Shown here: positions 10,801 to 62,570 of the stretch, piece after piece | Layout of the letters: each line of letters starts with the position of its first letter | Numbering within the stretch: position 1 is the stretch's first letter | NCBI GenBank assembly: GCA_026770705.1 | Contig: JANJGN010000102.1 | Coordinates: 186,001-250,000, forward strand | Reading direction: 5' to 3' | Source of the DNA: Isurus oxyrinchus | Taxonomy: Eukaryota | Length of the DNA: 64,000 bases | Program-made: the position numbers and the translations under genes | Notes under the pieces: generated by a model | The model's database searches: none | The model's input: only the letters and a program-made list of their open reading frames with translations | What the model was told of the DNA's origin: nothing

Positions 10801-13800
10801 GGGTGTAGGGGCTGGAGGAGGTTACAGAGAGAGGAAAGGTTGTAGGGGCTGGACGAGGTTACAGAGAGAGGGAGGGGTGTAGGGGCTGTAGGAGATTACA
10901 GAGATAGGGAGGGTTGTAGGGGCTGGAGGAGGTTACAGAGATAGGGAGCAGTGTAGGGGCTGGAGGAGGTTACAGAGAGAGGGAGGGGTGTCGGGGCTGG
11001 TGGAGGTTACAGAGCAAGGGAGGTGTGTTGGGGCTGGACGAGGTTACAGAGATAGGGAGGGTTGTAGGGGCTGGAGGAGGTTACAGAGATAGGGAGGGGT
11101 GTAGGGGCTGGAGGAGGTTACAGAGATAGGGGTGTAGGGGCTGGAGGAGGTTACAGAGATAGGGAGGGTTGTAGGGGCTGGAGGAGGTTACAGAGATAGG
11201 GAGGGGTGTCGTGGCTGGAGGAGGTTACAGAGATAGGAGGGTTGTAGGGGCTGGAGGAGGTTACAGAGATAGGGAGGGTTGTAGGGGCTGGAGGAGGTTA
11301 CAGAGATAGGGAGGGTGTAGGGACAGGAGGAGGTTACAGAGATAGGGGTGTAGGAGCTGGAGGAGGTTGCAGAGATAGGGAGAGGTGTAGGGGCTGGAGG
11401 AGGTTACAGAGATAGGGAGGGTGTAGGGACAGGAGGAGGTTACAGAGATAGGGAGGGATGTAGGGGCTGGAGGAGGTTACAGAAATAGGGAGGGGTGTAG
11501 GGACTGGAGGAGGTTACAGAGATAGGGAGGGTTGTAGGTGCTGGAGGAGGTTACAGAGATAGGGAGGGGTGTAGAAGCTGGAGGAGGTTACAGAGATAGG
11601 GAGGGGTGTAGGGGCTGGAGGAGGTTACAGAGATAGGGAGGGTGAAGGGACAGGAGGAGGTTACAGAGATAGGGAGGGGTGTAGGGGCTGGAGGAGGTTA
11701 CAGAGATAGGAGTGTAGGGGCTGGAGTGAGGATACAGTGATAGGGAGGGTTGTAGGGGCTGGAGGAGGTTACAGAGATAGGGAATGTTGTAGGGGCTGGA
11801 GGAGGTTACAGAGATAGGGAGGGTTGTAGGGGCTGGAGGAGGTTACAGAGAGAGGGAGGGTTGTAGGGGCTGGAGGAGGTTACAGAGATAGGGAGGGTTG
11901 TAGGGGCTGGACGAGGTTACAGAGTGAGGGAGGGGTGTAGGGGCTGGAGGAGGTTACAGAGAGAGGAAAGGTTGTAGGGGCTGGACGAGGTTACAGAGAG
12001 AGGGAGGGGTGTAGGGGCTGTAGGAGATTACAGAGATAGGGAGGGTTGTAGGGGCTGGAGGAGGTTACAGAGATAGGGAGCAGTGTAGGGGCTGGAGGAG
12101 GTTACAGAGAGAGGGAGGGGTGTCGGGGCTGGTGGAGGTTACAGAGCAAGGGAGGTGTGTTGGGGCTGGACGAAGTTACAGAGATAGGGAGGGTTGTAGG
12201 GGCTGGAGGAGGTTACAGAGATAGGGAGGGGTGTAGGGGCTGGAGGAGGTTACAGAGATAGGGGTGTAGGGGCTGGAGGAGGTTACAGAGATAGGGAGGG
12301 TTGTAGGGGCTGGAGGAGGTTACAGAGATAGGGAGGGGTGTCGTGGCTGGAGGAGGTTACAGAGATACGAGTGTTGTAGGGGCTGGAGGAGGTTACAGAG
12401 ATAGGGAGGGTTGTAGGGGCTGGAGGAGGTTACAGAGATAGGGAGGGTGTAGGGACAGGAGGAGGTTACAGAGATAGGGGTGTAGGAGCTGGAGGAGGTT
12501 ACAGAGATAGGGAGAGGTGTAGGGGCTGGAGGAGGTTACAGAGATAGGGAGGGTGTAGGGACAGGAGGAGGTTACAGAGATAGGGAGGGATGTAGGGGCT
12601 GGAGGAGGTTACAGAAATAGGGAGGGGTGTAGGGACTGGAGGAGGTTACAGAGATAGGGAGGGTTGTAGGTGCTGGAGGAGGTTACAGAGATAGGGAGGG
12701 GTGTAGAAGCTGGAGGAGGTTACAGAGATAGGGAGGGGTGTAGGGGCTGGAGGAGGTTACAGAGATAGGGAGGGTGAAGGGACAGGAGGAGGTTACAGAG
12801 ATAGGGAGGGGTGTAGGGGCTGGAGGAGGTTACAGAGATAGGGAGGGGTGTAGGGGCTGGAGGAGGTTACAGAGATAGGGAGGGTTGTAGGGGTTGTAGG
12901 AGGTTACAGAGATAGGGAGGGGTGTAGGGCCTGGAGGAGGTTACAGAGATAGGGAGGGTTGTAGGGGCTGGAGTGAGGTTACAGAGATAGGGAGGGTTGT
13001 AGGGGGTTGGAGGAGGTTACAGAGAGAGGGAGGGTTGTAGGGGCTGGAGGAGGTTACAGAGATAGGGAGGGTTGTAGGGGCTGGACGAGGTTACAGAGTG
13101 AGGGAGGGGTGTAGGGGCTGGAGGAGGTTACAGAGAGAGGAAAGGTTGTAGGGGCTGGACGAGGTTACAGAGAGAGGGAGGGGTGTAGGGGCTGTAGGAG
13201 ATTACAGAGATAGGGAGGGTTGTAGGGGCTGGAGGAGGTTACAGAGATAGGGAGCAGTGTAGGGGCTGGAGGAGGTTACAGAGAGAGGGAGGGGTGTCGG
13301 GGCTGGTGGAGGTTACAGAGCAAGGGAGGTGTGTTGGGGCTGGACGAGGTTACAGAGATAGGGAGGGTTGTAGGGGCTGGAGGAGGTTACAGAGATAGGG
13401 AGGGGTGTAGGGGCTGGAGGAGGTTACAGAGATAGGGGTGTAGGGGCTGGAGGAGGTTACAGAGATAGGGAGGGTTGTAGGGGCTGGAGGAGGTTACAGA
13501 GATAGGGAGGGGTGTCGTGGCTGGAGGAGGTTACAGAGATAGGAGGGTTGTAGGGGCTGGAGGAGGTTACAGAGATAGGGAGGGTTGTAGGGGCTGGAGG
13601 AGGTTACAGAGATAGGGAGGGTGTAGGGACAGGAGGAGGTTACAGAGATAGGGGTGTAGGAGCTGGAGGAGGTTGCAGAGATAGGGAGAGGTGTAGGGGC
13701 TGGAGGAGGTTACAGAGATAGGGAGGGTGTAGGGACAGGAGGAGGTTACAGAGATAGGGAGGGATGTAGGGGCTGGAGGAGGTTACAGAAATAGGGAGGG

Positions 13801-16800
13801 GTGTAGGGACTGGAGGAGGTTACAGAGATAGGGAGGGTTGTAGGTGCTGGAGGAGGTTACAGAGATAGGGAGGGGTGTAGAAGCTGGAGGAGGTTACAGA
13901 GATAGGGAGGGGTGTAGGGGCTGGAGGAGGTTACAGAGATAGGGAGGGTGAAGGGACAGGAGGAGGTTACAGAGATAGGGAGGGGTGTAGGGGCTGGAGG
14001 AGGTTACAGAGATAGGAGTGTAGGGGCTGGAGTGAGGATACAGTGATAGGGAGGGTTGTAGGGGCTGGAGGAGGTTACAGAGATAGGGAATGTTGTAGGG
14101 GCTGGAGGAGGTTACAGAGATAGGGAGGGTTGTAGGGGCTGGAGGAGGTTACAGAGAGAGGGAGGGTTGTAGGGGCTGGAGGAGGTTACAGAGATAGGGA
14201 GGGTTGTAGGGGCTGGACGAGGTTACAGAGTGAGGGAGGGGTGTAGGGGCTGGAGGAGGTTACAGAGAGAGGAAAGGTTGTAGGGGCTGGACGAGGTTAC
14301 AGAGAGAGGGAGGGGTGTAGGGGCTGTAGGAGATTACAGAGATAGGGAGGGTTGTAGGGGCTGGAGGAGGTTACAGAGATAGGGAGCAGTGTAGGGGCTG
14401 GAGGAGGTTACAGAGAGAGGGAGGGGTGTCGGGGCTGGTGGAGGTTACAGAGCAAGGGAGGTGTGTTGGGGCTGGACGAAGTTACAGAGATAGGGAGGGT
14501 TGTAGGGGCTGGAGGAGGTTACAGAGATAGGGAGGGGTGTAGGGGCTGGAGGAGGTTACAGAGATAGGGGTGTAGGGGCTGGAGGAGGTTACAGAGATAG
14601 GGAGGGTTGTAGGGGCTGGAGGAGGTTACAGAGATAGGGAGGGGTGTCGTGGCTGGAGGAGGTTACAGAGATACGAGTGTTGTAGGGGCTGGAGGAGGTT
14701 ACAGAGATAGGGAGGGTTGTAGGGGCTGGAGGAGGTTACAGAGATAGGGAGGGTGTAGGGACAGGAGGAGGTTACAGAGATAGGGGTGTAGGAGCTGGAG
14801 GAGGTTACAGAGATAGGGAGAGGTGTAGGGGCTGGAGGAGGTTACAGAGATAGGGAGGGTGTAGGGACAGGAGGAGGTTACAGAGATAGGGAGGGATGTA
14901 GGGGCTGGAGGAGGTTACAGAAATAGGGAGGGGTGTAGGGACTGGAGGAGGTTACAGAGATAGGGAGGGTTGTAGGTGCTGGAGGAGGTTACAGAGATAG
15001 GGAGGGGTGTAGAAGCTGGAGGAGGTTACAGAGATAGGGAGGGGTGTAGGGGCTGGAGGAGGTTACAGAGATAGGGAGGGTGAAGGGACAGGAGGAGGTT
15101 ACAGAGATAGGGAGGGGTGTAGGGGCTGGAGGAGGTTACAGAGATAGGGAGGGGTGTAGGGGCTGGAGGAGGTTACAGAGATAGGGAGGGTTGTAGGGGT
15201 TGTAGGAGGTTACAGAGATAGGGAGGGGTGTAGGGCCTGGAGGAGGTTACAGAGATAGGGAGGGTTGTAGGGGCTGGAGTGAGGTTACAGAGATAGGGAG
15301 GGTTGTAGGGGGTTGGAGGAGGTTACAGAGATAGGGAGGGGTGTAGAAGCTTGAGGAGGTTACAGAGATAGGGAGGGGTGTAGGGGCTGGAGGAGGTTAC
15401 AGAGATAGGGAGGGTGTAGGGACAGGAGGAGGTGACAGAGATAGGGAGGGGTGTAGGGACAGGAGGAGGTGACAGAGATAGGGAGGGGTGTAGGGGCTGG
15501 AGGAGGTTACAGAGATAGGGAGGGGTGTAGGGGCTGGAGGAGGTTACAGAGATAGGGAGGGTGTAGGGACAGGAGGGGGTTACAGAGATAGGGGTGTAGG
15601 AGCTGGAGGAGGTTACAGAGATAGGGAGGGGTGTAGGGGCTGGAGGAGGTTACAGAGATAGGGAGGGTGTAGGGACAGGAGGAGATTACAGAGATAGGGA
15701 GGGATGTAGGGGCTGGAGGTTACAGAAATAGGGAGGGGTGTAGGGACTGGAGGAGGTTACAGAGATAGGGAGGGGTGTACGGGCTGGAGGAGGTAACAGA
15801 GATAGGGAGGGGTGTAGGGGCTGGGTGAGGTTACAGAGATAGGGAGCAGTGTAGGGGCTGGAGGAGGTTACAGAGATAGGGAGGGGTGAAGGGGCTGGAC
15901 GAGGTTACAGAGATAGGGAGGGTTGTAGGGGTTGTAGGAGGTTACAGAGATAGGGAGGGTTGTATGGGCTGGAGGAGGTTACAGAGATAGGGAGGGGTGT
16001 AGGAGGTTACACAGATAGAGGGTTGTAGGGGCTGGAGGAGGTTACAGAGATAGGGAGGGTTGTAGGAGGTTACAGAGATAGGGAGGGTTGTATGGGCTGG
16101 AGGAGGTTACAGAGATAGGGAGGGGTGTAGGGGCTGGAGGAGGTTACAGAGATAGGGAGGGGTGTACGGGCTGGAGGAGGTTACAGAGATAAGGATGGGG
16201 TGTAGGGGCTGGAGGAGGTTACAGAGATAGGGAGAGATGTAGGGGCTAGAGGAGATTACAGAGATAGGGAGGGTTGTAGGGGCTAGAGGAGGTTACAGAG
16301 AGAGGGAGGGTTGTAGGGGCTGGAGGAGGTTGCAGAGATAGGGAGGGGTGTAGGGGCTGGAGGAGGTTACAGAGATAGGAGTGTAGGGGCTGGAGTGAGG
16401 ATACAGTGATAGGGAGGGTTGTAGGGGCTGGAGGAGGTTACAGAGATAGGGAATGTTGTAGGGGCTGGAGGAGGTTACAGAGATAGGGAGGGTTATAGGG
16501 GCTGGAGGAGGTTACAGAGATAGGGAGGGGTGTCGGGGCTGGAGGAGGTTACAGAGATAGGAGGGTTGTAGGGCCTGGAAGAGGTTACAGAGATAGGGAG
16601 GGTTGTAGGGGCTGGAGGAGGTTACAGAGAGAGGGGGAGGTGTAGGGGCTGGAGGAGGTTACAGAGAGAGGGAATGTTGTAGGGGCTGGAGGAGGTTACA
16701 GAGATAGGGAGGGTTGTAGGGGCTGGAGGAGGTTACAGAGATAGGGAGGGGTGTCGGGGCTGGAGGAGGTTACAGAGATAGGAGGGTTGTAGGGGCTGGA

Positions 16801-19800
16801 AGAGGTTACAGTGATAGGGAGGGTTGTAGGGGCTGGAGGAGGTTACAGAGAGAGGGGGAGGTGTCGGGGCTGGAGGAGGTTACAGAGAGAGGGAGGGTTG
16901 TAGGGGCTGGAGGAGGTTATAGAGATAGGGAGGGGTGTAGGAGCTGGAGGAGGTTACAGAGAGAGGGAGAGGTGTAGGGGCTGGAGGAGGTTACAGAGAG
17001 AGGGAGGGTTGTAGTGGCTGGAGGAGGTTACAGAGATAGGGAGGTTTGTAGGGGCTGGAGGAGGTTACAGAGATAGGGAGGGTTGTAGGGGCTGGAGTGA
17101 GGTTACAGAGATAGGGAGGGTTGTAGGGGCAGGAGGAGGTTACAGAGATAGGGAGGGGTGTCGAGGCTGGAGGAGGTTACAGAGATAGGGAGGGTTGTAG
17201 GGGCTGGAGGAGGTTACAGAGATAGGGAGGGGTGTCGTGGCTGGAGGAGGTTACAGAGATAGGAGGGTTGTAGGGGCTGGAGGAGGTTACAGAGATAGGG
17301 AGGGTTGTAGGGGCTGGAGGAGGTTACAGAGAGAGGGAGGGTTGTAGGGGCTGGAGGAGGTTACAGAGATAGGGAGGGTTGTAGGGGCTGGACGAGGTTA
17401 CAGAGTGAGGGAGGGGTGTAGGGGCTGGAGGAGGTTACAGAGAGAGGAAAGGTTGTAGGGGCTGGACGAGGTTACAGAGAGAGGGAGGGGTGTAGGGGCT
17501 GTAGGAGATTACAGAGATAGGGAGGGTTGTAGGGGCTGGAGGAGGTTACAGAGATAGGGAGCAGTGTAGGGGCTGGAGGAGGTTACAGAGCAAGGGAGGT
17601 GTGTTGGGGCTGGACGAGGTTACAGAGATAGGGAGGGTTGTAGGGGCTGGAGGAGGTTACAGAGATAGGGAGGGGTGTAGGGGCTGGAGGAGGTTACAGA
17701 GATAGGGGTGTAGGGGCTGGAGGAGGTTACAGAGATAGGGAGGGTTTTAGGAGCTGGAGGAGGTTACAGAGATAGGAGGGTGTAGGGGCTGGAGGAGGTT
17801 ACAGAGAGAGGGAGGGTGTAGGGGCTGGAGGAGATTACAGAGATAGGGGTGGGTGAGTGCCACAAGGGGATTTGAAACCGAGGATGAGAGTTTTAAAATG
17901 GAGGCGTTTCTGGACCAGCAGTCAGTGTGGGTCAGCAAGCACCTGAGGGGGTTTGGGGGTGGGGGGGCGGGGGAGGGGGGGGGGGGGGGGCGGACGGGCG
18001 GACAGGTGAACGGGACTCAGTGCGTTTGGACACGGGGGTAGCTGAATTTTTGGATGACCTCACGGTAAGAGAGCGGAAGCAGCCAGGAGTGCGTCGGAAT
18101 AGTTGAGTTTGGAGGCAAGAAACGTATGAACGAGGGTTTCAGCAGCAGATCAGCTAAAGAGAAACTGTTTCCGATGGCTGCAGGGTCCGTAAGCAGAGAG
18201 CCCCACGTTGAAGGCGATTGGCAAAAGTAGCAGAGGTAACAGCAGCAAAATGTTTTCCCGGCAGCGCGTGGTTAGGATTTGGGATGTGCTTCCTGAAAGG
18301 GCGATGGATACAGATTTAATAATTCCTTCCAAGCAGAAATTAGATAAATAATTGCACGAGAAAATATTGCAGGAATCTGCGGCAGGAGCAGGGACTAACT
18401 GGACTGCTGTTCAGCACTGCCAGCACAGAATCGAGAGCCCAAATGTCCTCCTTTTGATTGTAAAGTGTCGTGACTGGTTGCTGCGCTTCGGGGAGACAGG
18501 TTGGGAGGGATACTCAAACGGCGAATCCTGTACCAGGGTACGGACCCCGTGCGTCCTTACCGTAGCAGTGGTCCAGGAGGGGGTTAGACATGTTTGGAAT
18601 GTACCCCTCGGGTGGAGAGTAGCCACGACACACCACAAACGCTTCTGCGGGAGAAAAAAGCATTCGTCAGTCCTGCGCCCCAAACACCAAACATCGCTGA
18701 GGAGAGAGACACACGTTACTATCTTGCACTCATCTGGACAAACACAAGAGTGCCAAATTTCAGACGATCACGCCAATTTATACTACAGGAGAAAAGGGTG
18801 CTGAAAACGGGGGGTGGGAGGGTGTCCGGAACAAGGGGACAGAACCTTAAACTGAGAACCAGGCCGTTCAGGGGTGATATCAGGAAGCACTTCTTCACAC
18901 AAAGGGGAGTGAAAATCTGGAAACTCTCTCCCCCCCAAAATGCTGTTGAGGGTGGGTGGGGTGGGGGTTTCGGGGTTGGGGGTGGGTCAATTAGAAATTT
19001 CAAAACTGAGGTTGATTGATTTTTGATTCAGTTCAGAAGAGTCATATTGGACTCAAAATGTTAACTCTGTTTCTCCACAGATGTTGCCAGAACTGCTGAG
19101 CTTTTACAGCACTTTCTAGTTTTATTTCAAATCTCCAGCACTAGCAGTATTTTGTTTTTATTTGATAGTTTTGTTGGATAAGAGGTATGAAGAGCTACAG
19201 TAGATAGAGTGAAGATACAGATTAGCCACAATCCAAATGAATGGTGGGACAGGCTCGAAGAGTAGTTCAGCCCCTCCCTACCATCAAGGCAAATCTCTTC
19301 TGATTTATAAGCATCCGTCCACCTACGGACATTTCACATAACGATTAGACTCTAAGTGACCGCATGGTGAGCCCGATTACGACGACTCAACCTGAAGCTC
19401 GAACACTTACCGATGCTGGAGTTACGGCTGCTCCGTGGCTTTGCGCACGTGACCTCGTTGAAGAAGATCTTCAGCTGCGAGTACAACAGCGTGATGTCCT
19501 TCCCACGGAAGATCTGTTGGAATTGCAAAGCTGCAGGACTTAAACGCTGGCATAAACCTCCTCGTCTGAATGACCGGTTTCCCTCCAGTAAGTACTATTT
19601 ATCTCGCATTAATATAGTACCTTTGACAACATAAAACACCCCAAAGCATCCACAGGACCGTAATCCAACACACTCCACACTGAGTCAAAGCAGGATTAGG
19701 GTTAGGGATTGGTCAAGTGAAGTTCTAAGGAGCGGGTCAAAGAAAGAGAGAGAAGTGGAGAGGTTTTATCCATTTATTCATTCGTGGGATAAGTGTTCAC

Positions 19801-51319: not shown

Positions 51320-53233
51320 TGTTGCATGTGCCTGCATTGTGATGTAAAGGTTCTCAGTAGAGCAATGGCTAATGTGAGACTGGAGAATATCACTACCCAC
51401 ACTATGATGTATAGAGTCACATGGTAATAGACTGAGAGAACAGTCTAGAGAGAAACTCTAGAAGCAACCCACCTGCATGAGACAGCACCATGCATGACAG
51501 TAACCTGGGATCTGTAAATAGTTAGCAGTTAAGAACTAAGGGTTCATGGTTAAATACAACAAGTCTCAAGATTTCATTGTTGAGCCACCACAGCTGGCGC
51601 CATTACACAACATGGTGACCAGCAGTGATAACACAACAAGACTGGCAGCAGTGGTTGCTTCTATAAGATGTCAAATCAGCGATGATATGAATGGTGGCAT
51701 TTTAAATGATGGACTCAGAACAGTATCCGTAGGTATGAAAACTAAATGCAGCTGTAGCCAGAATAGAGGGATGTTCACCAAAGAAGAAAACTTGAAGAAG
51801 CTATAGACCTACAGACTTAGAGGTTGAGGAATCCACCAGAGTGAGTGGAAGTCCATTGCAAGACCCCAAGTGATGCAGAGTAAAAAAGAAAAAACCTGGT
51901 TAAATTACAAAGACGGTGAGCAACACTACAATAAATTGCAAGACCCTGAGTAATGCTGAATCAAGATACTTAGTTAAATCACAAGGCAGTGTGCAGAACT
52001 ACAAAAATTGCAAGTCCCTGAGCGACCTAGGTTCAATGGGCCTGGTTTGTTCACAAAATGGTGAGCAAAAATACACAAAAGAAACTACTTACAAAATAGA
52101 ATAGGTGGCAGTCCCATGGCTCAGCATATCCATAGAGAAGCTGGAAGACAGCTGCAAGCTTAAGAAAAAACCTGCAGAAAAGAAACTTCAGAATAAAGAG
52201 AGAAAACTGCAGAGCACAGTTTAAAAAAAAAGAGTTTGCAGAGTTTTTAAAAAATTACTGCTGTTCTGAATATTTTTTTAAAATGGCAAGCAGAGCAAAT
52301 GGAAAGAAGCGCTGTAGCTTTAAGTTAACAAAAAAGCGTGCCTGTTGAAACACCCTAAGCACAAAGTTGAATGGATCTGCAGAGTTAAAAAAATTAAGTT
52401 TTCAGAAAGAATCACCCAGAAAAGAAATGCTGCTATTTTGAAGTTTTTAAAGTTTAGAAAAAGAAGGTCCACGATTGCTGGGGAGCTGATCAAAACCTGA
52501 AAGGTGTGGGTAGCTCACAACAAGGAAAACCGACAGCTGGAGACAGGCTATGGTGAAAAAAATTGGTTACTGCATTGACACACTTAAAGTGGCAACGGCA
52601 CTTAAAGCAGTAACTGCAAGCAAAAACAAACAGCCATGAGCTGAAAATTAGAAGAACCAGGCGCTTTTTGGTTAAGCAAATGGCAACACCAGACATAAGA
52701 GTGGTCTATCACACCCCCAATAAAGCGCTGAAGGGGACAAAAATCCCAGAGAGAAGGCAACATGAGATCCCAGAGAGAGAGTAACTCCCAATAAAGCGCT
52801 GAGGGCAACAAGAGATCCCAGAGAGAGGGCAACAAAAGACCCCAGAGCGAGGAAGCCAAATGTCCCCAGAGGGAGGGGAAGAAAAGACCCCAGAGCGAGA
52901 GAGACAGAAGTCCCCAGAGCAAGAAAGACGTAACCGCAAGATGGCTACCGACCATGCCAGTGCAATGAAATGCATGAGGAGAAGAGTTTAGCACATAAGA
53001 AAATGTCTGAGAAGCAGCCAAAAGGCTCAAAAACAGCATTTCTTGAAAATGCTGACACACTACCAAAACTGCAACAGCAGGCGGTGAAAAGTGCACAGAT
53101 GTCTGAGTGAAGGAAAGCTACCTGAGCTAACTCATAAGAAGCAAAATGTGCAAAAAGTAAATGAACCTTTTCTACAGGAAAATGTTCGCATCAGAGCTGT
53201 ACTGGAAGACTTGAAGCTTCAAGCTGAGTCAAT
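51320..53233 (+). mobile_element. Degenerate LTR element (5' LTR 51320-51612, PBS, internal region; 3' LTR missing)
   Basis: tgttg...caaca termini followed by tggtgacc; the internal 3' part is similar to 44660-44870 of the other LTR element. Confidence 0.65.
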
Positions 53234-53234
53234 G

Positions 53235-53503
53235 AGATAAAAACAAAAAACTGCGGATGCTGGAAATCCAAAACAAAATCAGAATTACCTGGAAAAACTC
53301 AGCAGGTCTGGCAGCATCGGCGGAGAAGAAAAGAGTTGACGTTTCGAGTCCTCATGACCCTTCGACAGAACTTGATTTCGAGTCCAAGAAAGAGTTGAAA
53401 TATAAGCTGGTTTAAGGTGTGTGTGTGGGGGGCGGAGAGATAGAGAGAGAGGGGGCGGGGGGTGTGTGGTTGTGTGGACAAACAAGCAGTGATAGAAGCA
53501 GAT
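53235..53503 (-). mobile_element. Penelope terminal fragment
   Basis: Near-identical to 37380-37614. Confidence 0.9.
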
Positions 53504-54043
53504 TTCTCTCTCTCTCTTTGGTAGTCCCTCAAAGCGGGACGGACACTTGCCATTGAACACATCTCGTTGCAAAAGGGCATGGAGTCTTTTAATGGGCCGA
53601 GGATGCAGCATTGCAGCTATTGCAAGGTGATCATCCGAATTAGAAAGATTTACGATTGTACAGTGTCTTAGAATGATCTGAGAGTGTTTAATATAGAGTG
53701 AATTATTTAAAGTGAAGCGAGTGTCAAAAGCAGCAGCCATTTTGCACTCAGGAAGCAGGGATGGGATAACAACAATTTATACAGCATGCTGATTGGTCGA
53801 CAAGTGAATTCTGGTTGGTGGAGGCGTTGCCATGGAGAATGCAGCATGGAACAGTTAACTGCCAAGCTTTGTTCAAATTCAAACTGGGCAGGTGGATTCT
53901 GATTGGTCAAGGCATTGCCCTGGTGAATGAACCAGGGAATGCCTTTTGTTTAGATGAACAAGGCACAATGTGTGGACATGCTCATTTTCAAACACATTCT
54001 TATTCTTGTCAAATGCAGTCCATGGTGACAACATCTAACATAC

Positions 54044-54325
54044 CTAATAAAACAGTAAGCGGTTTATCGAGACTCATATGATCTACTTGGCAGCTGTAGG
54101 TGTCTCCATTCTGTGGATCAATCCTGATGTATTTTAAGATGTTAAATATCCAGTCCGTCTCAACCATTAATTGTGATGAATTGACCGGCCCAGTGAATGA
54201 CCTCCCATTGATCAAGAAGATAATGTCAGTTTCGAAAGGGTAAAATTTTTCTGCGTAACAGAACAGAGTGTTTGACTCTCGTGGGGTGTAGTTTTCCTTG
54301 GTGTAAATGTGTACAACTGGCTTTT
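54044..54325 (-). CDS. WA: WA alpha2 Ig-C1 domain exon (282 nt, open frame), beta2-microglobulin-like
   Basis: KPVVHIYTKENYTPRESNTLFCYAEKFYPFETDIIFLINGRSFTGPVNSSQLMVETDWIFNILKYIRIDPQNGDTYSCQVDHMSLDKPLTVLL; C1-set motifs LxCxxxxFYP and YxCxVxH; donor G|gtatgt. Confidence 0.92.
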
Positions 54326-54449
54326 CAGTAACAGAAATAGTGAAAAACTGTAGCAACAACATGCATCCCTACTTTCACATAACATGTATTTTAAAAGACC
54401 CTGATATAACAGTGGCATTACTACTCATATTTAATCATTTGTTTGAGAA

Positions 54450-55730
54450 AGATGTAGTGTCAGATGACAGGCTCATGTCATACCGATATTTAAGAAGGGG
54501 AACAACACGTCCAGGGAATTATAGACTAGTCATCGGTGGTGCGAAAAGTAATGGTATCATTCCTAAAGGAGAGAATAGAAAAAGCACCTAGAAATGAGAA
54601 ATATAAAAATGAATAGCATAGCTTTCAAAAGGGAAAATCTTGCTTGAATTTTTTTGAGAAGTTAACAGAGAAAGTAGACGATCGTAATGTAGTAGATGTA
54701 ATTTATCTGGATTTTCAAAAGGCCTTCGATAAGGTGCCCCATAATAGACTGATGAATGAGGTCAGAGAATGTGGATCGGGGGACAAGTGGCAGAATGGAT
54801 TGCTAAATGGCTTCAAAAGGCAGAGAATGGGAATAAAGGGTAGTTATTCAGAGTGGCAGAAGGCAGGAAGTGGTGTTCCACAAGGATCAGTGCTGGGATC
54901 ACTGCTGTTCACAATTTACGTTAATGATTTAAACTTTGGAATCAAAAACACATTAAATTTGCAGGTGACACCAAATTGGGAAGATAGCCAATACAGAGAG
55001 GATTGCAACAAATTACAAGAGGACATTAATAAACTTGCAGAAGGGGCAAAAAACAGAAATAAATGTGAGGAGGTACATTTTGGTAGGAAGAATAGGGATG
55101 TCACATTACTTGCAAGGTACAAGTCTAGGTGAGGTAGAGGAACCATAAGACCATAAGACATAGGAGCAGAAATTAGGCCAATCGGTCCATCGAGTCTGCT
55201 CCACCATTCAATCATGGCTGATAAGTTTCTCAACCCCATTCTCCCACCTTCTCCCCATAACCTTTGATCCCCTTACCAATCAAGAACCTATCTATCTCAG
55301 TCTTAAATACACTCAATGACCTGGCCTCCACAGCCTTCTGTGGCAATGAATTCCTTGGATTCACCACTCTCTGGCTAAAGAAGTTTCTCCTCATCTCTGT
55401 TCTAAAAGGTCTTCCCTTTACTCTGAGGCTGTGCCCTCGGGTCCTAGTCTCTCCTACTAATGGAAACATCTTCCCCACGTCCACTCTGTCCAGGCCTTTC
55501 AGTATTCTGTAAGTTTCAATCAGGAACAAAGGGACCTCAGAGTATCAATACATCTATCATTAAAAAATACAGCAGAGGTTAGCAACACCATAAAAATAAA
55601 GCAAAATCAAGCACTGGGTTTTACTTCTAGAAGGATTGAATTGAAAAGTAGAGAATTTATGCTCAATCCTTATTAAACCTTGGAGTGACCATATTTAAGA
55701 GGATTGCATGCGGTTCTAGTTGCCATGACA
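54450..55730 (+). mobile_element. CR1 RT fragment in WA intron 2, with a nested minus-strand CR1 3' end (~55144-55521)
   Basis: VDVIYLDFQKAFDKVPH...SGVPQGSVLG.LLFTIYVNDL; aggaac is repeated on both sides of the nested copy. Confidence 0.88.
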
Positions 55731-56589
55731 TAGTGGTATTGTAACTGGATAGTATTCCAGAGGCCCAGGGTAATGCTCTAGGGACCTGGGTTTAAATCCC
55801 ACCATGGCAGCTGGTGGAATTTGAACTCAATAATAATCTGGAATTAAAAGTCAAATGATGACCATGAAACCATTGCCAATTGTGGTTAAAAACCCATCTG
55901 GTTCACTAATGGGAAGGAAATCTGTCACCCTTACCTGGCCTGGCCTACATGTGACTCCAGATCCACAGCAATGGGGCTGACTCTTAAATGCCCTCTGAAC
56001 AAGGGCAATTAGGGATGGGCAATAAATGCTGGCCCAGGCAGTGATGCCCACATCCTATGAATGGATATGAAATAACAAGAGGCAGAAAACACTGATGGGG
56101 GCAGTTTAGAAGCCCCCCTATTATTAGCCAAACTGTTGGGTAAAATATTATTCAAACTTGTAACAAAGGTAATGCAATACTCCTGGGGAACTTTAATCCT
56201 CATACAAGCTGGACAAATCAAATGAACTAAAGTAGTAGAGAACAAATTCATGGAATTGAGACAATTTCTGGAAAAAAAATAGACCATGGACCTAACCAGG
56301 GAAGCAGCTTTTTAGGTCTTCTTTTGTGTGAAATCAGGTTAATTAACAACCTCAATCTCTGATCCTGTGGAGCAGAGTGACCATAATATGAATTTCACAC
56401 TGAGTTTGAGAATGGCCTACTTAAGTCGGAAACTGGAGTATTGAACTTAAATAATGTATGAGGGGTGAGATGGCTAAGGTTGATTTGAATAAAAAATGCT
56501 CTCTGTCACTGAATGTGAGTGCACTAACTTTAGTGCTCATGCAACGTCGCTGCAAGTAGTTTTGTTTAAACTGTAAATGAGTGACTTAC

Positions 56590-56862
56590 TGTGGATGATG
56601 CTTTTAGCATTTGTCAGCTTTATAATTTCTTCAGTGATGGTTTGCAGTCGAGTGTTGAACCCACGAGCTCTCTCTGTATAATAAGTCACTTCTTCTTGGC
56701 CCAGTTCCTTTATCCCATCTGTCACATTCCCATTTAAAACAAACATTTGTGCTCCATAATCATAGAACAAAAAGGGAATGGAATTTATATTGAAGGTGTC
56801 TACATTTCTTTTTGAATCCGGCGTATAGCTGTAGTACAACCTTGCAGAAACAGATTCAACTT
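56590..56862 (-). CDS. WA: WA alpha1 domain exon (273 nt, open frame)
   Basis: EVESVSARLYYSYTPDSKRNVDTFNINSIPFLFYDYGAQMFVLNGNVTDGIKELGQEEVTYYTERARGFNTRLQTITEEIIKLTNAKSIIH; ttttctctgtctag| ... |gtaagt. MHC-domain size, strand-then-helix pattern, no Cys. Confidence 0.85.
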
Positions 56863-57494
56863 CTAGACAGAGAAAACAGCAGGCAAATCACAAAATGAAA
56901 TTAGACATTTGCATTTATATCGCACCTTATCATGTCTCTCCAAAGCATGGCTAAAGCCTTCATGCATATGGCAGTGACTGTTTATTGTATAAATATATAT
57001 GGCAGCCATTTTGTACCCAGTTCGATCCCACAAACAGCAGTAAATAGAATGGCCAATTCATCCATTTTGTGGTCTTGTTGCATGAAGGAGGAATGTTAGC
57101 CAGTACATCAGAGGGCCTCCCTGTTCCATTTCCTCTGGTGCCATGGGATCTTTAGTATTGATCTGAACAAGTGAACAGCACCTGAACTTAACATTTGATC
57201 TTGTCAGCTCTGACAATGCGGCAACCCCTCAATGTTTGACTGTCGGCCTAAACTATGAACCCCAGTCAGGGTATGAGTCTTAAATCCACAACCTGTGACT
57301 GAGTGAAATCATTGTACAATTTACCCTCTGTAGATCTGAGACATCGCTGAGAGACTGAAGCACTCAACATACAGCAAGTCCGATTGTAAGCAAAGAACTA
57401 TTGTTAAAATGTTAGATTGGAACACTTTTTTGAAATAAATGTTTTAATAAATTCAAGTAAATTAACTCTAAGATTACAATCATGAGACTCTCAC

Positions 57495-57582
57495 CCGTGG
57501 AGGCTGAATTCAGCAGCTCATACTCAGTGAGATATAAACAGACAATGGGATAAGGTTACAAAACTAGAATTTTCATTCCCAT
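57495..57582 (-). pseudogene. WA: WA leader exon with a premature stop
   Basis: MGMKILVL*PYPIVCLYLTEYELLNSAST(E), 88 nt; donor G|gtgaga whose phase matches exon 2. Confidence 0.7.
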
Positions 57583-59733
57583 TTCTTCATCCACCTGTTC
57601 CCTTTCAAATTTAAAACAATTTGGAGGATCTCTGAGTGTAGACTTTCCCATGGATAAGGGCTGGCTTGGAACTCAAACCCCACCCACCCCATACTGTGAA
57701 AGCAAACTGCACTGATGTAACTTGGATCTTACTTGGTGTAATTTTACTTGGACTCAAGAGCTCAAGAGGGGAGCAGCTCAGAGACTGGACTAGAAAAGTA
57801 CAAGACCAATTCTGGGATCCAAACACTCCACAGCAAGGGCTCAGGTTCCAAGCCCCCCCCCTCCCCAGTGTGTACACACAATACACTCACCAATCTCTGC
57901 CCATGTTACTGTTGTCAGTGAAGCGATGATTATTAGGGAGCTACAGAGTTCCATGTTGCTGAATGACCGTTTGTATCTCCAGGAGCTCTCAGGCAATGTG
58001 AATGGGGACCGAGTGTAACTCAGCACGTTGATTGATGAAGATTCAACTGCGCTGTGATTCAATGATGTAACTCAATCTTACCACCCAAACACATCATTGG
58101 AGTCTTATTTCGCAATCCTGTCATCCTAACAGCTTTAATTACTATCTTTATTCATCTATCATTTGGACTCAGTTCAGTAGTTGAACTAGTTGTTCAGGAA
58201 ACAGTTTGAATACATTTACCTGCGTAACAAACAGCATTCCTAGAGGCATGTTTAGCATTACAAAATTCCTGTGGGGTTTGGAGTGGGAGGAAGTGCATTC
58301 GTGGGGTGGGGTTAGAGTGAGAGATGAGTCGGTTATAGGGGGAGGGTATGGCGGATTTGAGCGTCCATCAAGAGAGCATGGAAAGAGATGGGATAATGGA
58401 AAACAAGGCAAATGAGCTGGTTTTGGGGAAGCTTTTAAAGAGGAATGAAAGACACCAAGATGGAGAGAATTCCAAAGTGTGGGAGCTCGGTGGGTGAGTG
58501 AATGGAGAGGCTAGAGAATGAGAAGAGTGGACAGCCAGCCTCTCCAGATGAACGGGATCCCAGGCTGGAACAGATGGGAGAGGTAGAGGGGCTTGCAGCA
58601 ACTGGAGAAATGATTTTCCTACTTTTTTTTATCTAGTTGACCATTGCAGCTACTCAGTCAGACTCCGATGTTTTGAATGTCATATCTTTTGGCACTTTTC
58701 AATCTGGAGTTTGCAGCTAAACTGTGCAGCTTCTCATCACAGAACACTGCTGAATTTCTGTTCCTTGTCCCCACCAGTCGGGGTATTGGCTTCTGGGGTT
58801 GCCTGGAACACATTGGCAAGAATCCCAGTGCCCAGTGATGGTTCTACCCCTCCAGTCCTCATCAATGAGCCTGACTGGTTGGGCAGTCACCATGGCGTCC
58901 TGGAATAGATACAATATATCAGATATCAGATTAATAACTCTGCCCCAGAGGGCTGACTCCAATCTTCCATTATGAGACATAGTATCTTGGGAACCAATTA
59001 GATCGCAAAGAGACTCCACTATTCATTCAGTTAGATTTAGCATCAATAAATGCAAAAATCAGGTTTGTTTTAATACTTTTTTCTCCCCACCCCACTGTCT
59101 TTCCAGTGGAATCCCCGAATGGGATGCGCATACGTGCTGGCCACCTTAACTTCTTCGACAGCACCTTCCAAACCCGTAATCTCTGCCATCTAGAAGGACA
59201 AGGGCAGCAGACACATGGGAACACCGCCACCTGGAAGTTTCCCTCCAAATCACACACCATCCTGATTTGGAACTATGTCACTGTTCCTTCACTGTTGCTG
59301 GGTCAAAATCCTGGAACACCTTCCCTAACAGCACTGTGGATGCACCTACACCATGTGGACTGCAGCGGCTCAAGAAGGCGGCTCACCACCACCATCACCT
59401 GAAAATATGTCCCAGGATTGACACACACAGCACATCAAAGGGTATCTGCCAGTCAGTATTTATGATGAGGCCATCCCTTTAAGGGAAACCATCCCTTTAA
59501 TGGAAGTTTTGTAAGGCTAAGATATTTGTCTGTCAAAGTGACATTGCCAAAAAGCTCACAGGTGTAATCAGTGTGTGTTTCTGTGACCGAGGAGCTTTAG
59601 TGGGTGGAGCCAGAAACTACAATAGAGTTGTTTGTGTCGGAGGAACTCAAAGCAAGTTTTAATGAACTCCTCTCCTTAATCAGTCTCATCTTTACTCCAG
59701 CCTTGCTCAGAAATCATTCGCCTTCCTTTCAAG
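57583..59733. promoter_or_regulatory. Shared divergent promoter region between WA and WB
   Basis: Lies between two oppositely oriented leader exons; contains a LINE/SINE-tail fragment at ~59140-59400. Confidence 0.65.
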
Positions 59734-59815: not shown

Positions 59816-62570
59816 GTAATTGGGTTTATTGACCCTCCCTCACTTTAACATTCTACCTGAGAGGTTTTGTCAAAGTACATTGGAGAGAAACTATATATAA
59901 CAGTCATTGGTTCAGTACTGGGAGAGTTGTCAGGAAAGAGTATGCTCCACCAGAAACAGTGATGGAAGCAGAATGCAAAATAGCTTCGAAAAAAGGAAAT
60001 GAGTTAAATTATAAGGAGGAAAGAGAAGCTTACAGGAAAAGAATAGGGGAATGGGACTAAGGAAAGAGCTCTTCCAGATGTGCTGAGCTGAATGGCCTCC
60101 TTCTGTCCTCCAGAATCTGGCCTGAATTTTTCTGTCGGTGAGTTGGGGGTGGGGCCTGCTCGCCAACGTGAAAATGACACGGGATGACGTCAAGCGGAAC
60201 CCCCGACATCATCCCGCTCCATTTTAATATTCAGGAAGGCAGGCGAACAGCGAAATCAGCTGTCCGCCTGCCGAACTGTTAATGGCCAATTGAGGCCATT
60301 GACAGGATAATTAAGACAATTAAAGGTCCTGCCCGTCCAACCTTAAGGCAGACAGGCAGGCCAGGAGCCCCAGCGGGCTTCTGAAAAAACATGAAACCTC
60401 ATCCACTGGCGGGATGAGGTTTCATGTCTGTTTTTAAGAAGTTTAATAAAGTTTTAGTCATATTTATTATCATGTCCCATCTTGTGTGACATTGTCACAT
60501 GAGGGGGACATGTTCATAATTTTTTTATTTTTCTATTTTTGATGTTTATAAAGCTTTCACCGATCTCCCTGAGACAGCACTTAGATGGGACATGTTAATT
60601 AAAAGCACAGAAAATTTATTAAACTTTTTAAAAACAGACATGAAACCTCACCCGCCAGTGGATGAGGTTTCATGCTTTTTCAGAAGCCCGCTGGGGCTCC
60701 TGGTCTGTCTGCCAACCTTAAGGGCAAGACCCTTAATTGGGTTAACTACCCTGTCAATGGCCTCAATTGGCCATTGACAGGTCGGCAGGCGGACTGCTGA
60801 TTTCGCTGTCCGCCCGCCTTCCTGAATATTTAAATGAAGCGGGATGACGTCACTCCCGCATCCCCGACATCATCCCACGTCGGTGAGCAGGCCCCGCCCC
60901 TAACTTGCCGACGGAAAAATTCTGGCCTTAGTCTCAGGGAGGTGTGCTCTTTCATGCGCATGCATGAAACAGCGCACTTTGAGAGTTGGGGAATCCCTCC
61001 CCCCCCGCACAGGAAGCGCATAGCGCTTCCCATCGGGCAGGCTGCTGGGCGGGCCTTAATTGGCCACCCTCTCAAAATGGCGACAGGGTCCGCTTCGGTG
61101 GCGGTGATTGGCTGCCCGCCCGTTGCTGAGCCGGTGGGGCCCGCCAACCCATCAAGGGCAAAATTCTGTCCTCTATATCTGATTATTCTATCAGGGCCCT
61201 CCAGGCCACTCTACTGCTAAATTGATATGCACCATACCCACTTTATGCCCGAGGACTGTCAGAGTGCCTGTTAATTATTATTAATTAATTTTAAGTAGTG
61301 ATTGAGTATTTAATTGTGTTCAGATGGAGATTCACTGCTGCTCATACTTTTTTTCATCCATTCTTTGGATGTGGGCATCGCTGGCTAGGCCAGCATTTGT
61401 TGCCCATCCCTAATTGCCCTTGAGAAGCTGGTGGTGAGTTACCTTCTTGAACCTCTGCAGTCCNNNNNNNNNNNNNNNNNNNNNNNNNNNNNNNNNNNNN
61501 NNNNNNNNNNNNNNNNNNNNNNNNNNNNNNNNNNNNNNNNNNNNNNNNNNNNNNNNNNNNNNNNNNNNNNNNNNNNNNNNNNNNNNNNNNNNNNNNNNGT
61601 GTACACGTATGTATATGTGTGTATGCATACGTATGTGTGCATGTATGCGTGTGTATATATTTATGTANNNNNNNNNNNNNNNNNNNNNNNNNNNNNNNNN
61701 NNNNNNNNNNNNNNNNNNNNNNNNNNNNNNNNNNNNNNNNNNNNNNNNNNNNNNNNNNNNNNNNNNNNNNNNNNNNNNNNNNNNNNNNNNNNNNNNNNNN
61801 NNNNNNNNNNNNNNNNNTGCATGTCTGTAAATAAAAGCTTATGCAGCATGTAAGGATTAGCAACCGGCCTATTGTTCACCACCTGGCTTTCTGGAATAGA
61901 ACAAACCTACCAATTTCTATTGCACTAGGATCCTTCTTCTTAAAAAATATTGAACAACACTATGAATATCTCTCTCGCCCTCAGTAGCAATCCTATTGAG
62001 AGACACCCTTTGCGCCCACCCCACCCACTGAACCATCTCCCTTCTCTGGAAGCTGTACCACATGTACGGTGCTGAGTGGATGCTTTCACTGTACAGGACA
62101 GAAAGTGTGAATGAAATTACAGTCATGACTACAGTACATGGCATAATGCTACACTTGTATTATCTGATGAGCAGTACGTGGCACAGAAGATCCATGCCTC
62201 TGATTTAAAAACTACCGAGATCTGACCCTAATACAAGACCAGGGTAGAAGATAGTCGTTTTTTTATATCCATTTCTGTGATCTGTTGTGTTTTTCAGATC
62301 TGCATATTTTCCACGTGCAGTCTGAATGCATCTATCATGATAATAAACCAGCCAATTTTTCTTGGCAAGATGGTTATGATGGCATTACGATTTTGTACTA
62401 CGATTTCACTAATAAAACATTTGTTGCGGTTCAGTCTATTGCACAAACTGAGGTGGATAGGCGGAATTCAAACACGGATTATGTTGCATCAGTTCCACGC
62501 CGTATCCAGAGTCTCTGTAACAAGATTAAACAAACAGCTATAACAAGCAACCTCACCATGGAAAAAATGG
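59734..62570 (+). CDS. WB: MHC W-category beta-chain (WB)-like gene, 5' part: join(59734-59815, 62298-62570); continues beyond the window
   Basis: Signal-peptide exon and beta1 exon, both phase 1, with canonical splice sites and no lesions. Confidence 0.85.
60119..61171. mobile_element. MITE-like element interrupted by an inverted partial copy of its own family (60584-60927)
   Basis: TIRs ggcctgaatttt ... aaaattctgtcc; tta is duplicated at 60581-60583 and 60928-60930 relative to the uninterrupted copy at 49451-50076. Confidence 0.85.
61464..61817. other. Two assembly gaps (61464-61598 and 61668-61817) around a (TG/TA) simple repeat
   Basis: N runs in WB intron 1. Confidence 0.98.
62298..62570 (+). 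CDS. WB: WB beta1 domain exon (273 nt)
   Basis: DLHIFHVQSECIYHDNKPANFSWQDGYDGITILYYDFTNKTFVAVQSIAQTEVDRRNSNTDYVASVPRRIQSLCNKIKQTAITSNLTMEKM; conserved Cys pair; tgtgtttttcag| ... |gtaaga. Confidence 0.9.

What the first reader, a model, noticed from the sequence alone, without database searches (positions are those of the whole stretch)
54044..54325. Alpha2 domain carries beta2-microglobulin signature residues
Seen: LMVETDWIFNILKY aligns without gaps to human b2m L54-S-F-S-K-D-W60-S-F62-Y-L-L, keeping L54, D59, W60 and F62 but with V at the F56 position. The usual C1-set core Trp is replaced by Phe (DIIFLING, versus b2m EVDLLKNG and class II xVTWLxNG), and the domain ends GDTYSCQVDH. Established: b2m W60 and F56 pack under the class I platform. 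Inference: a class-I-like interdomain contact in a chain that also has its own alpha1 exon, so this is not B2M itself.
Basis: partly seen in the sequence, partly recalled or inferred. Interest (0 to 1): 0.8.

Follow-up and report, generated by a model that had tools for sequence, protein, structure and literature searches.

The report
Shark W-category MHC alpha-2 exon
This is the immunoglobulin-like exon of a shark "W-category" MHC alpha-chain gene, whose beta-2-microglobulin-like residues are the published hallmark of that family, and this particular copy looks like a damaged duplicate.

Summary
HMMER aligns its D-W-x-F to human b2m D59-W60-x-F62, L to L54, V to F56, and F to L39 at the core-Trp site.

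The interpretation also holds. Contigs from RNA-containing runs join this exon to an alpha1 exon (56590-56862), and that exon to a leader (57891-57954). It is therefore not B2M.

It is not new. These residues are the defining features of W-category WA chains (Okamura et al. 2021, PMC8713811). The exon is 56-80% identical to 18 elasmobranch WA-like proteins, including the published species Triakis scyllium. In those, Y7, F36, D57, W58 and F60 are present in 18 of 18. V at the F56 site is the shark norm (16 of 18), not a peculiarity.

New detail on this copy:
- Its alpha2 acceptor reads TG, not AG.
- No connecting-peptide/transmembrane exon lies in the 54 kb downstream.
- It is unique at two otherwise conserved sites (T32, I59).
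- Every transcript contig matches a 97.5%-identical variant, not this copy.

It is probably a decaying duplicate.

The parts
54044..54325 (-). WA alpha2 (Ig C1-set) exon, 282 nt, phase 1 at both ends. It carries the b2m-like residues: Y7, F36 at the core-Trp site, L52, V54, D57, W58 and F60 (numbered from the K encoded at 54323-54321).
   Evidence: Translation; Pfam C1-set E 5e-16; b2m column alignment; transcript joint 54325<->56590 and a contig leaving the window at 54044; 56-80% identity to 18 WA homologues.
54326..54327 (-). Last two intron bases before the alpha2 exon. They read TG on the coding strand where AG is expected.
   Evidence: Sequence. Read laying reports the skipped part as 'CA..AC' on the + strand, which is GT..TG on the coding strand, with no ambiguity in the cut (both = 0).
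54317..54318 (-). Nearest in-phase AG, 9 nt inside the exon. If used, it would drop three codons (K-K-P). Its use is not observed.
   Evidence: Read from the sequence. No joint to 54316 is among the 15 listed (6 more joints were not shown).
56590..56862 (-). WA alpha1 exon, 273 nt. The acceptor is ..tctag| and the donor is |gtaagt, both phase 1. It has no Cys pair (alpha-chain type).
   Evidence: Sequence; tblastn shows 56-78% identity to alpha1 of P0003-P0007; joints 54325<->56590 and 56862<->57891.
57891..57954 (-). WA leader exon (MELCSSLIIIASLTTVTWAEI plus the first base of the next codon). It is intact, with donor |gtgagt.
   Evidence: tblastn to homologue signal peptides, e.g. 76% over 21 aa to P0004 and P0007 and 60% over 45 aa to P0006; sequence; joint 56862<->57891 in run X1, depth 8870.
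62298..62570 (+). Beta1-type exon of the divergently transcribed partner gene (presumed WB), 273 nt, phase 1 at both ends, with two Cys about 64 residues apart.
   Evidence: Sequence and splice sites. Pfam and PDB give no significant match; the best is ULBP6/RAET1L class-I-like alpha2 at E 0.29-0.35. Its identity as WB rests on architecture and was not confirmed by homology here.

Best explanation
The stretch is the alpha2 exon of a W-category MHC alpha-chain gene (WA) of a shark. The gene runs on the minus strand as leader, alpha1 and alpha2. It lies head-to-head with a beta1-type exon of a presumed WB gene about 4.3 kb from its start codon.

The b2m-like residues are inherited family characters, not a peculiarity of this gene. 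They are Y7, no core Trp (F36), L52, D57, W58 and F60.

In the model of Okamura et al. 2021, they let the alpha2 domain dock under the alpha1/beta1 platform of the WA/WB heterodimer. This is the way b2m W60, F56 and L54 dock under the class I platform. That step is inferred and was not shown here.

V at the b2m F56 position is the usual elasmobranch state.

This particular copy is probably (about 0.65) a decaying or truncated recent duplicate, not the working gene:
- Its alpha2 acceptor is TG.
- No connecting-peptide/transmembrane/cytoplasmic exon lies in the 54 kb downstream.
- It alone has T32 and I59 at otherwise conserved sites.
- All transcript contigs come from a 97.5%-identical variant that is spliced on to a connecting-peptide exon absent from the window.
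For: Identity:
- C1-set E 5e-16.
- The word search gave 1 hit among 4 candidates. With that hit's longer isoform as query it gave 18 hits among 32 candidates, all elasmobranch. Two are Triakis scyllium 'MHC class II alpha chain like protein' entries, from the species of the 2021 paper.
- Alpha2 identity is 56-80%. Alpha1 identity is 56-78% to P0003-P0007.

Signature:
- Y7, F36, D57, W58 and F60 are each 18 of 18. L52 is 12 of 18. V54 is 16 of 18.
- These are the residues the paper lists as WA/b2m-specific: W61, L55, Y8, and F/L at position 37.
- Column agreement with b2m is shown.

Architecture:
- Phase-1 splice sites.
- Joints alpha1->alpha2 in 3 of 4 runs and leader->alpha1 in 1 of 4 runs. 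Exon-to-intron depth contrast is about 1000-fold in X1.

Copy status:
- TG acceptor.
- tblastn with the C-terminal parts of 10 homologues at E up to 1000, plus regex scans, found no TM exon.
- The 29-base continuation of the transcript beyond 54044 is absent from the window at up to 3 mismatches.
- All 7 alpha2 differences are shared by 3 of 4 runs, and the 2 covered ones by the fourth. Six of the 7 are non-synonymous.
- T32 versus I in 17 and V in 1 of 18 homologues. I59 versus T in 18 of 18. The transcribed variant has the family residue at both sites.
Against: - By HMMER score the exon is closer to class II beta-2 domains (67 bits single sequence; 83.9-88.3 bits with the WA profile) than to b2m (45-47; 74.9). 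The overall domain is therefore not uniquely b2m-like.
- W at this column is also invariant in class II beta-2 (paper).
- The paper's main text gives F/Y at position 57 for WA. This exon and 16 of 18 elasmobranch homologues have V.
- I made no tree and no structural alignment, so clustering with b2m rests on the paper.
- The partner exon was not confirmed as WB by homology.
- Against pseudogene status: all three exons are open and the other splice sites are good. An in-phase AG lies 9 nt downstream. A contig of depth about 22 in X1 carries the window's letters at 54220 and 54229. Contigs cannot show absence of a rare transcript. The TM exon could lie beyond the window start. The variant could be an allele of this locus, not a paralogue.
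Confidence: 0.9

Rival explanations
1. The working WA gene itself. The transcribed 97.5% variant would be simply another allele of this locus. The connecting-peptide/TM exon would lie more than 54 kb downstream, beyond the window start. The TG would be either a private null mutation of the assembled haplotype or a rare non-canonical 3' splice site.
For: Leader, alpha1 and alpha2 are open with otherwise canonical phase-1 sites. Intron contigs in X1 are about 99% identical to the window (records 4, 5, 7, 8). The transcript's exon start is exactly at 54325.
Against: Four runs from four studies all show the same seven differences, and none shows the window version as a main contig. No TM exon or its 29-base start lies anywhere in 54 kb. 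Earlier scan notes give 12.7-18.3 kb for whole WA genes nearby (untested). There are derived residues at two sites conserved in 18 of 18 and 17 of 18 homologues.
Confidence: 0.25
2. A true beta-2-microglobulin gene or a b2m duplicate.
For: b2m is among the strongest PDB matches. RefSeq names the closest short hit 'beta-2-microglobulin-like'.
Against: Transcript contigs join the exon to an alpha1 exon, and that to the leader. Full-length homologues have alpha1 and a TM region. The RefSeq 'b2m-like' protein itself contains an alpha1 domain.
Confidence: 0.01
3. The Ig exon of a conventional class II chain (alpha2 or beta2). The Trp would then be the class II beta-2 interface Trp and not a b2m character.
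For: Class II beta chains give the highest single-domain HMMER scores. Class II beta-2 has an invariant W at the same column (paper).
Against: The core Ig Trp that class II alpha2 invariably keeps (paper) is F here and in 18 of 18 homologues. The upstream membrane-distal exon has no Cys pair, while the exon on the opposite strand does. All 18 word-search hits form one elasmobranch family that includes the Triakis scyllium entries.
Confidence: 0.03
4. A naturally TM-less WA chain. The copy would make a secreted alpha1-alpha2 protein by reading through the alpha2 donor, adding 14 residues and then a stop.
For: No TM exon is in the window. An X1 contig runs from the exon across the donor to 53507 at depth 252. 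Heterodontus RefSeq models P0001 and P0002 end two residues after the same donor.
Against: The read-through contig carries 8 differences from the window, so it belongs to the variant. It is about 3.5% of the spliced depth, as expected of unspliced RNA. The RefSeq models also lack a signal peptide and may be incomplete predictions. The TG acceptor argues for decay.
Confidence: 0.05

Closest known systems
W-category MHC alpha chain (WA), Okamura, Dijkstra et al. 2021 PNAS (PMC8713811); database examples Triakis scyllium P0005 and P0009
   Same: Leader/alpha1/alpha2 exon layout with phase-1 introns. W at alpha2 position 61, L55, Y8 and F instead of the core Trp at 37. Divergent pairing with a beta-type gene. 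76% alpha2 identity to both Triakis entries.
   Different: V, not F/Y, at position 57, though this is shared with 16 of 18 elasmobranch homologues including both Triakis entries. This copy has a TG acceptor, no CP/TM/CY exon in the window, and private T32 and I59.
Beta-2-microglobulin (class I light chain)
   Same: Same columns for Y10, L39 (F here), L54, D59, W60 and F62. The alignment is ungapped from residue 52 to the end of the domain. 45-47 bits single sequence and 74.9 bits with the WA profile.
   Different: b2m has no membrane-distal domain and its Ig exon follows the leader. Here the exon follows an alpha1 exon. F56 is V, and S61 is I in this copy (T in the family).
Class II beta-chain beta-2 domain (e.g. 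HLA-DP beta, I-A beta)
   Same: Highest HMMER scores (67 bits; 83.9-88.3 bits with the profile). It has a W at the same interface column according to the paper.
   Different: I did not test the class II beta-2 core-Trp residue; this exon has F at that column, as do 18 of 18 homologues. Class II beta-2 follows a beta1 exon with a Cys pair. This exon follows a Cys-free alpha1 exon, and the homologues carry the TM region that the paper assigns to alpha chains.
Heterodontus francisci 'beta-2-microglobulin-like isoform X1/X2' (XP_067880249-51; P0002, P0001)
   Same: 76% identical over alpha2. It has alpha1 plus alpha2 and ends just past the alpha2 donor without a TM region, as a read-through of this copy would.
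   Different: It has F at the b2m F56 column and T at L54. It has no recognisable signal peptide. Its locus could not be fetched.

Membership tests
W-category MHC alpha chain (WA) | Trp at alpha2 position 61 (the b2m W60 column), the residue the category is named after | tested here: met
   W58 of the exon aligns to b2m W60 in 5 of 5 and 2 of 2 printed alignments. W is present in 18 of 18 homologues. The definition was read in the paper.
W-category MHC alpha chain (WA) | No Trp at the Ig core position 37; F or L instead | tested here: met
   F36 aligns to b2m L39. F is present in 18 of 18 homologues. The transcribed variant has L. The paper gives F/L37.
W-category MHC alpha chain (WA) | L55 and F/Y57 (b2m L54 and F56 columns) | tested here: inconclusive
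   L is present (12 of 18 homologues). Position 57 is V, as in 16 of 18 homologues, with F in 2. The paper's main text says F/Y57. Its Fig. 3 and Dataset S2 could not be seen.
W-category MHC alpha chain (WA) | Tyr at alpha2 position 8 (b2m Y10 column) | tested here: met
   The Y of HIY aligns to b2m Y10. Y is present in 18 of 18 homologues.
W-category MHC alpha chain (WA) | Class II alpha-type architecture: signal peptide, alpha1 and alpha2 in one transcript | tested here: met
   Exons at 57891-57954, 56590-56862 and 54044-54325. Joints are seen in contigs of a 97.5-99% identical transcript.
W-category MHC alpha chain (WA) | Connecting peptide, alpha-type transmembrane region with conserved glycines, and cytoplasmic tail | tested here: not met
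   No such exon lies anywhere in the window (tblastn with 10 homologue C-termini at E up to 1000, regex, and the 29-mer). The transcribed variant does continue into a connecting peptide. It may lie outside the window or be lost in this copy.
W-category MHC alpha chain (WA) | Head-to-head pairing with a WB gene | tested here: inconclusive
   A phase-1, 273-nt beta1-type exon with a Cys pair lies on the opposite strand at 62298-62570. There was no significant Pfam or PDB match, and no WB homologue was retrieved.
W-category MHC alpha chain (WA) | Alpha2 clusters with b2m in phylogenetic trees | not tested
No b2m or class II alpha sequences could be obtained as stored proteins. HMMER scores rank class II beta-2 at or above b2m.
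W-category MHC alpha chain (WA) | Sequence similarity to published WA proteins | tested here: met
   76% (alpha2) and 66% (leader plus alpha1, 122 aligned residues) to Triakis scyllium P0005. Alpha2 identity to the other elasmobranch proteins ranges from 56% to 80%.
Beta-2-microglobulin | Ig exon spliced directly to the leader; no membrane-distal domain | tested here: not met
   Joint 54325<->56590 to an alpha1 exon in 3 of 4 runs. The leader joins alpha1 at 56862<->57891.
Conventional MHC class II alpha chain | Invariant core Trp at alpha2 position 37; no conserved W61/F57 | tested here: not met
   F at position 37 and W at position 61. The criterion is from the paper. No class II alpha chain is among the best 60 PDB matches in either search.
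Conventional MHC class II beta chain | Beta-2 domain preceded by a beta1 exon with a Cys pair (a recalled family character, not checked in a paper here) | tested here: not met
   The upstream exon has no Cys.

The most novel reading that the evidence does not exclude
This copy, like the Heterodontus RefSeq models that stop right after alpha2, could be a living transmembrane-less WA chain. That would be a soluble alpha1-alpha2 light chain that still docks by its b2m-type Trp loop. It would be a present-day analogue of the step in which a WA alpha chain lost its CP/TM/CY region on the way to b2m, as proposed in the 2021 class-II-first model.
Probability: 0.04. Interest if true: 0.55.

Novelty: new member of a known kind. 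Interest (0 to 1): 0.12.

Why it matters
The W-category is the proposed intermediate between MHC class II and class I, and its b2m-like alpha2 domain is the main argument for that. This exon adds one more shark copy that carries the signature.

It also shows, across 18 elasmobranch sequences, which signature residues are truly fixed and which are not. Y, F at the core site and D-W-x-F are fixed. L varies, and V usually replaces F/Y. That slightly refines the published generalisation but changes no concept.

The copy-specific defects matter only for annotation. The gene should not be counted as a working WA without further evidence.

Tried and rejected
- B2M proper: rejected on the alpha1->alpha2 joint.
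The real leader is 57891-57954 and is intact.
- A second alpha2-like exon in the window: none (tblastn).
- TM exon: not found. In one search only the 10 of 19 proteins that contain the IVC motif supplied C-terminal queries.
- One search ran all 19 proteins, but I printed rows for only 5 (P0003-P0007).
- P0001 was left out of alignment A1 because it is an isoform of P0002 with the same alpha2. Counts are therefore out of 18 rows, and P0015 and P0019 are near-duplicates of each other.
- Alpha1 and beta1 exons gave nothing significant in Pfam or the PDB.
- Findings look-ups by words and by sequence were blank.
- I also left unused the third search for homologous proteins, since exon-length queries cannot reach full-length WB or b2m.
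Exons were searched one by one, and the database protein P0002 served as the full-length query.
- Supplements of PMC8713811 were not opened. Its SI Fig. S11 (great white shark cluster), Dataset S2 and Fig. 3 (position 57, subgroup names) may bear on whether this very copy and the V57 state are already shown there.
- Two literature searches found 1 and 3 papers. Only PMC8713811 was read: outline and all four parts of Results and Discussion. The other two were seen as listings only.

Full report
**What is there.** The finding lies on the minus strand. Frame 1 of window 54040-54329(-) is a stop-free Ig domain that holds all three quoted strings: LMVETDWIFNILKY, DIIFLING and GDTYSCQVDH. Pfam calls it C1-set (E 5.2e-16, 59 bits). 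No second such exon is in the window (tblastn).

**Alignment to b2m.** phmmer against PDB sequences matched 1195 distinct chains at E up to 0.01. In the printed alignment to 8bp6_A, which begins with human b2m, the stretch from SSQL to the end is ungapped. Counting the chain's residues gives:
- window L52 = L54, V54 = F56, D57 = D59, W58 = W60, F60 = F62;
- the F of DIIF = L39, which is the Ig core-Trp site;
- the Y of HIY = Y10.

The Trp fell in that column in 5 of 5 printed alignments. It did so again in 2 of 2 with a profile of the family.

**Result against a simple 'b2m-like' reading.**

| Match | Single sequence | WA profile |
|---|---|---|
| Class II beta chains | 67 bits (HLA-DP beta) | 83.9-88.3 bits |
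| b2m | 45-47 bits | 74.9 bits |
| Class I alpha3 | 21-39 bits | 34.6 bits |

- No class II alpha chain is among the 60 rows shown in either search.
- The 2021 paper states that class II beta-2 domains invariably carry W at this same column.
- The b2m likeness is therefore a matter of a residue set, above all the missing core Trp together with W61, and not of overall score.

- Alpha1 exon: 56590-56862(-), 273 nt, acceptor ..tctag| and donor |gtaagt, both phase 1, no Cys.
- Leader: 57891-57954(-), MELCSSLIIIASLTTVTWAEI, donor |gtgagt.
- Alpha2 exon: 54044-54325(-), donor G|gtatgt.
- On the opposite strand, 62298-62570(+) is a 273-nt phase-1 exon with two Cys, a beta1 type.
- The layout is therefore a divergent alpha/beta pair, as the paper describes for WA/WB in sharks. 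The partner's identity as WB was not confirmed by homology.

**Relatives.**
- The word search with the exon found 1 protein among 4 candidates: Heterodontus 'beta-2-microglobulin-like isoform X2', 76% identical.
- Its longer isoform P0002 as query found 18 proteins among 32 candidates, all elasmobranch (sharks, skates, sawfish). RefSeq names them variously class II alpha- or beta-like.
- Two of them are Triakis scyllium 'MHC class II alpha chain like protein' entries. That is the species in which the W-category was defined.
- Alpha2 identity to the window is 56-80%. Alpha1 identity is 56-78% to P0003-P0007.
- In the 19-row alignment A1 (P0001 left out as an isoform of P0002), Y7, F36, D57, W58 and F60 are each 18 of 18.
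- L52 is 12 of 18 (T in 4, V in 2). V54 is 16 of 18 (F in 2: P0002 and P0006).
V at the F56-equivalent site is the elasmobranch norm, including both Triakis entries.
- The paper's main text says WA has 'L55 and F/Y57'. I could not see its Fig. 3 or Dataset S2.

**The literature.** I read the outline and all four parts of Results and Discussion of Okamura et al. 2021 (PMC8713811).
- It names the category after this Trp.
- It lists W61, L55, F/Y57, Y8 and F/L37 as shared between WA alpha2 and b2m.
- It shows WA/WB pairing and heterodimer behaviour for tiger salamander chains.
- It reports a tree joining WA alpha2 with b2m.
- It mentions a great white shark cluster of three presumable WA/WB pairs.

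Searches for 'W-category' with 'MHC' and 'microglobulin' (1 paper) and with 'shark' (3 papers) turned up nothing that changes this.

**Transcripts.** Twenty coded runs hold part of 54000-58000. I laid the contigs of X1, X2, X4 and X6, from four studies, on 52150-58149.
- Their kind is only guessed as RNA. X1 shows GT..AG joints and about 1000-fold more depth on exons than on introns, so it holds RNA.
- Joint 54325<->56590 (alpha1 to alpha2) is present in X1 (depth 7114), X2 (17.8) and X6 (21.7), but not in X4.
- Joint 56862<->57891 (leader to alpha1) is present in X1 only (depth 8870).
- The second refutation condition, exon spliced straight to a leader, is therefore also not met.
- At 54044 an X1 contig continues with 29 bases that are not in the window. 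Read with the exon's last base, they give D-QPPAQPHSG, which resembles the connecting peptide of the homologues.

**This copy versus the transcribed one.**
- Every contig over alpha2 differs from the window at the same seven places. All seven appear in X1, X2 and X6. The two places covered appear in X4.
- Six of the seven are non-synonymous: T32I, I35T, F36L, R41K, I59T and N72D, written window-to-transcript. Alpha1 has one non-synonymous change (T22I) and one silent change.
- At T32 the homologues have I in 17 and V in 1 of 18. At I59 they have T in 18 of 18. The window is thus alone, and the transcript has the family residue.
- At R41 and F36 it is the transcript that departs from the family.
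- The intron's last two bases in the window are TG, not AG (skipped ends 'CA..AC' on the + strand, both = 0).
- The homologues place the exon border at the same K|KP. The next in-phase AG is 9 nt inside the exon.
- No CP/TM/CY exon is found anywhere in the window. tblastn with 10 homologue C-termini at E up to 1000 and regex scans found none. The 29-mer was absent at up to 3 mismatches.
- Points the other way:
  - All three exons are open.
  - A contig of depth about 22 carries the window's letters at 54220 and 54229 in X1.
  - Contigs cannot prove absence.
  - The TM exon could lie beyond the window.
- My estimate is about 0.65 for a decaying or truncated duplicate, about 0.25 for an allele of a working gene, and about 0.05 for a TM-less product.

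**Mechanism.**
- Shown: family membership, conserved residue set, exon order and transcription of a near-identical copy.
- Inferred from the paper and from class I structures: the W/D/L/F loop of alpha2 packs into the underside of the alpha1/beta1 sheet of the WA/WB dimer, as b2m does under class I.

**Earlier scan notes.**
- The 'nonsense codon in the WA leader' (s1-866973) is contradicted by my data. That site is intronic, and the true leader is intact.
- Follow-up agents on neighbouring windows called other WA copies intact or dead members of a subgroup named WA_Nds3L. They said the cluster starting at 62298 matches a published great white shark cluster. I did not test those claims.
- The scan had thus already found this family on neighbouring DNA of the same genome.

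**Verdict.** This is one more shark copy and probably a damaged one. Interest is low.

Noticed in passing
The real leader is at 57891-57954. One low-depth X1 contig (depth 15) retains this intron part and joins 57497 to 56864.
   Followed up: yes
window 56718 (-), joint 56718<->57891: An alternative acceptor inside alpha1 (AG at 56719-56720) is used in X1 at depth 968, about 11% of the main joint. It is in frame and would remove the first 48 codons of alpha1. It was seen on the transcribed variant only.
   Followed up: partly
window 53507-54073 (-): An X1 contig (567 nt, depth 252, 8 differences from the window) runs from the alpha2 exon across its donor into the downstream intron. This is either unspliced RNA or an alternative 3' end of the transcribed variant.
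   Followed up: partly
window 54644-55132 (+) and 55230-55529 (-), in the alpha1-alpha2 intron: ORFs with a reverse-transcriptase look (YLDFQKAFDKVPH; motif recalled) indicate retroelement fragments. Bins 53150-53549, 55150-55549 and 55750-56149 draw contig depths of 10^4-10^5 in all four runs, as expected of dispersed repeats.
   Followed up: no
window about 2000-18000: A long stretch has GC 0.57 and GC skew near +0.79 in every 2-kb bin from 6 to 18 kb. It lies where a WA 3' end might have been expected.
   Followed up: no
P0001/P0002 (Heterodontus francisci XP_067880249-51) and other hits: RefSeq names for these WA-like proteins are inconsistent: 'beta-2-microglobulin-like', 'DP alpha-1 chain-like', 'B-L beta chain-like' and 'A beta chain-like'. 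Automatic annotation does not recognise the W-category.
   Followed up: partly
window 62298-62570 (+): The beta1-type exon has H-V-Q-S-E-C and W-Q-D-G-Y-D-G strands. Its only PDB matches, not significant (E 0.29-0.35), are to the alpha2 domain of the class-I-like ULBP6/RAET1L.
   Followed up: partly
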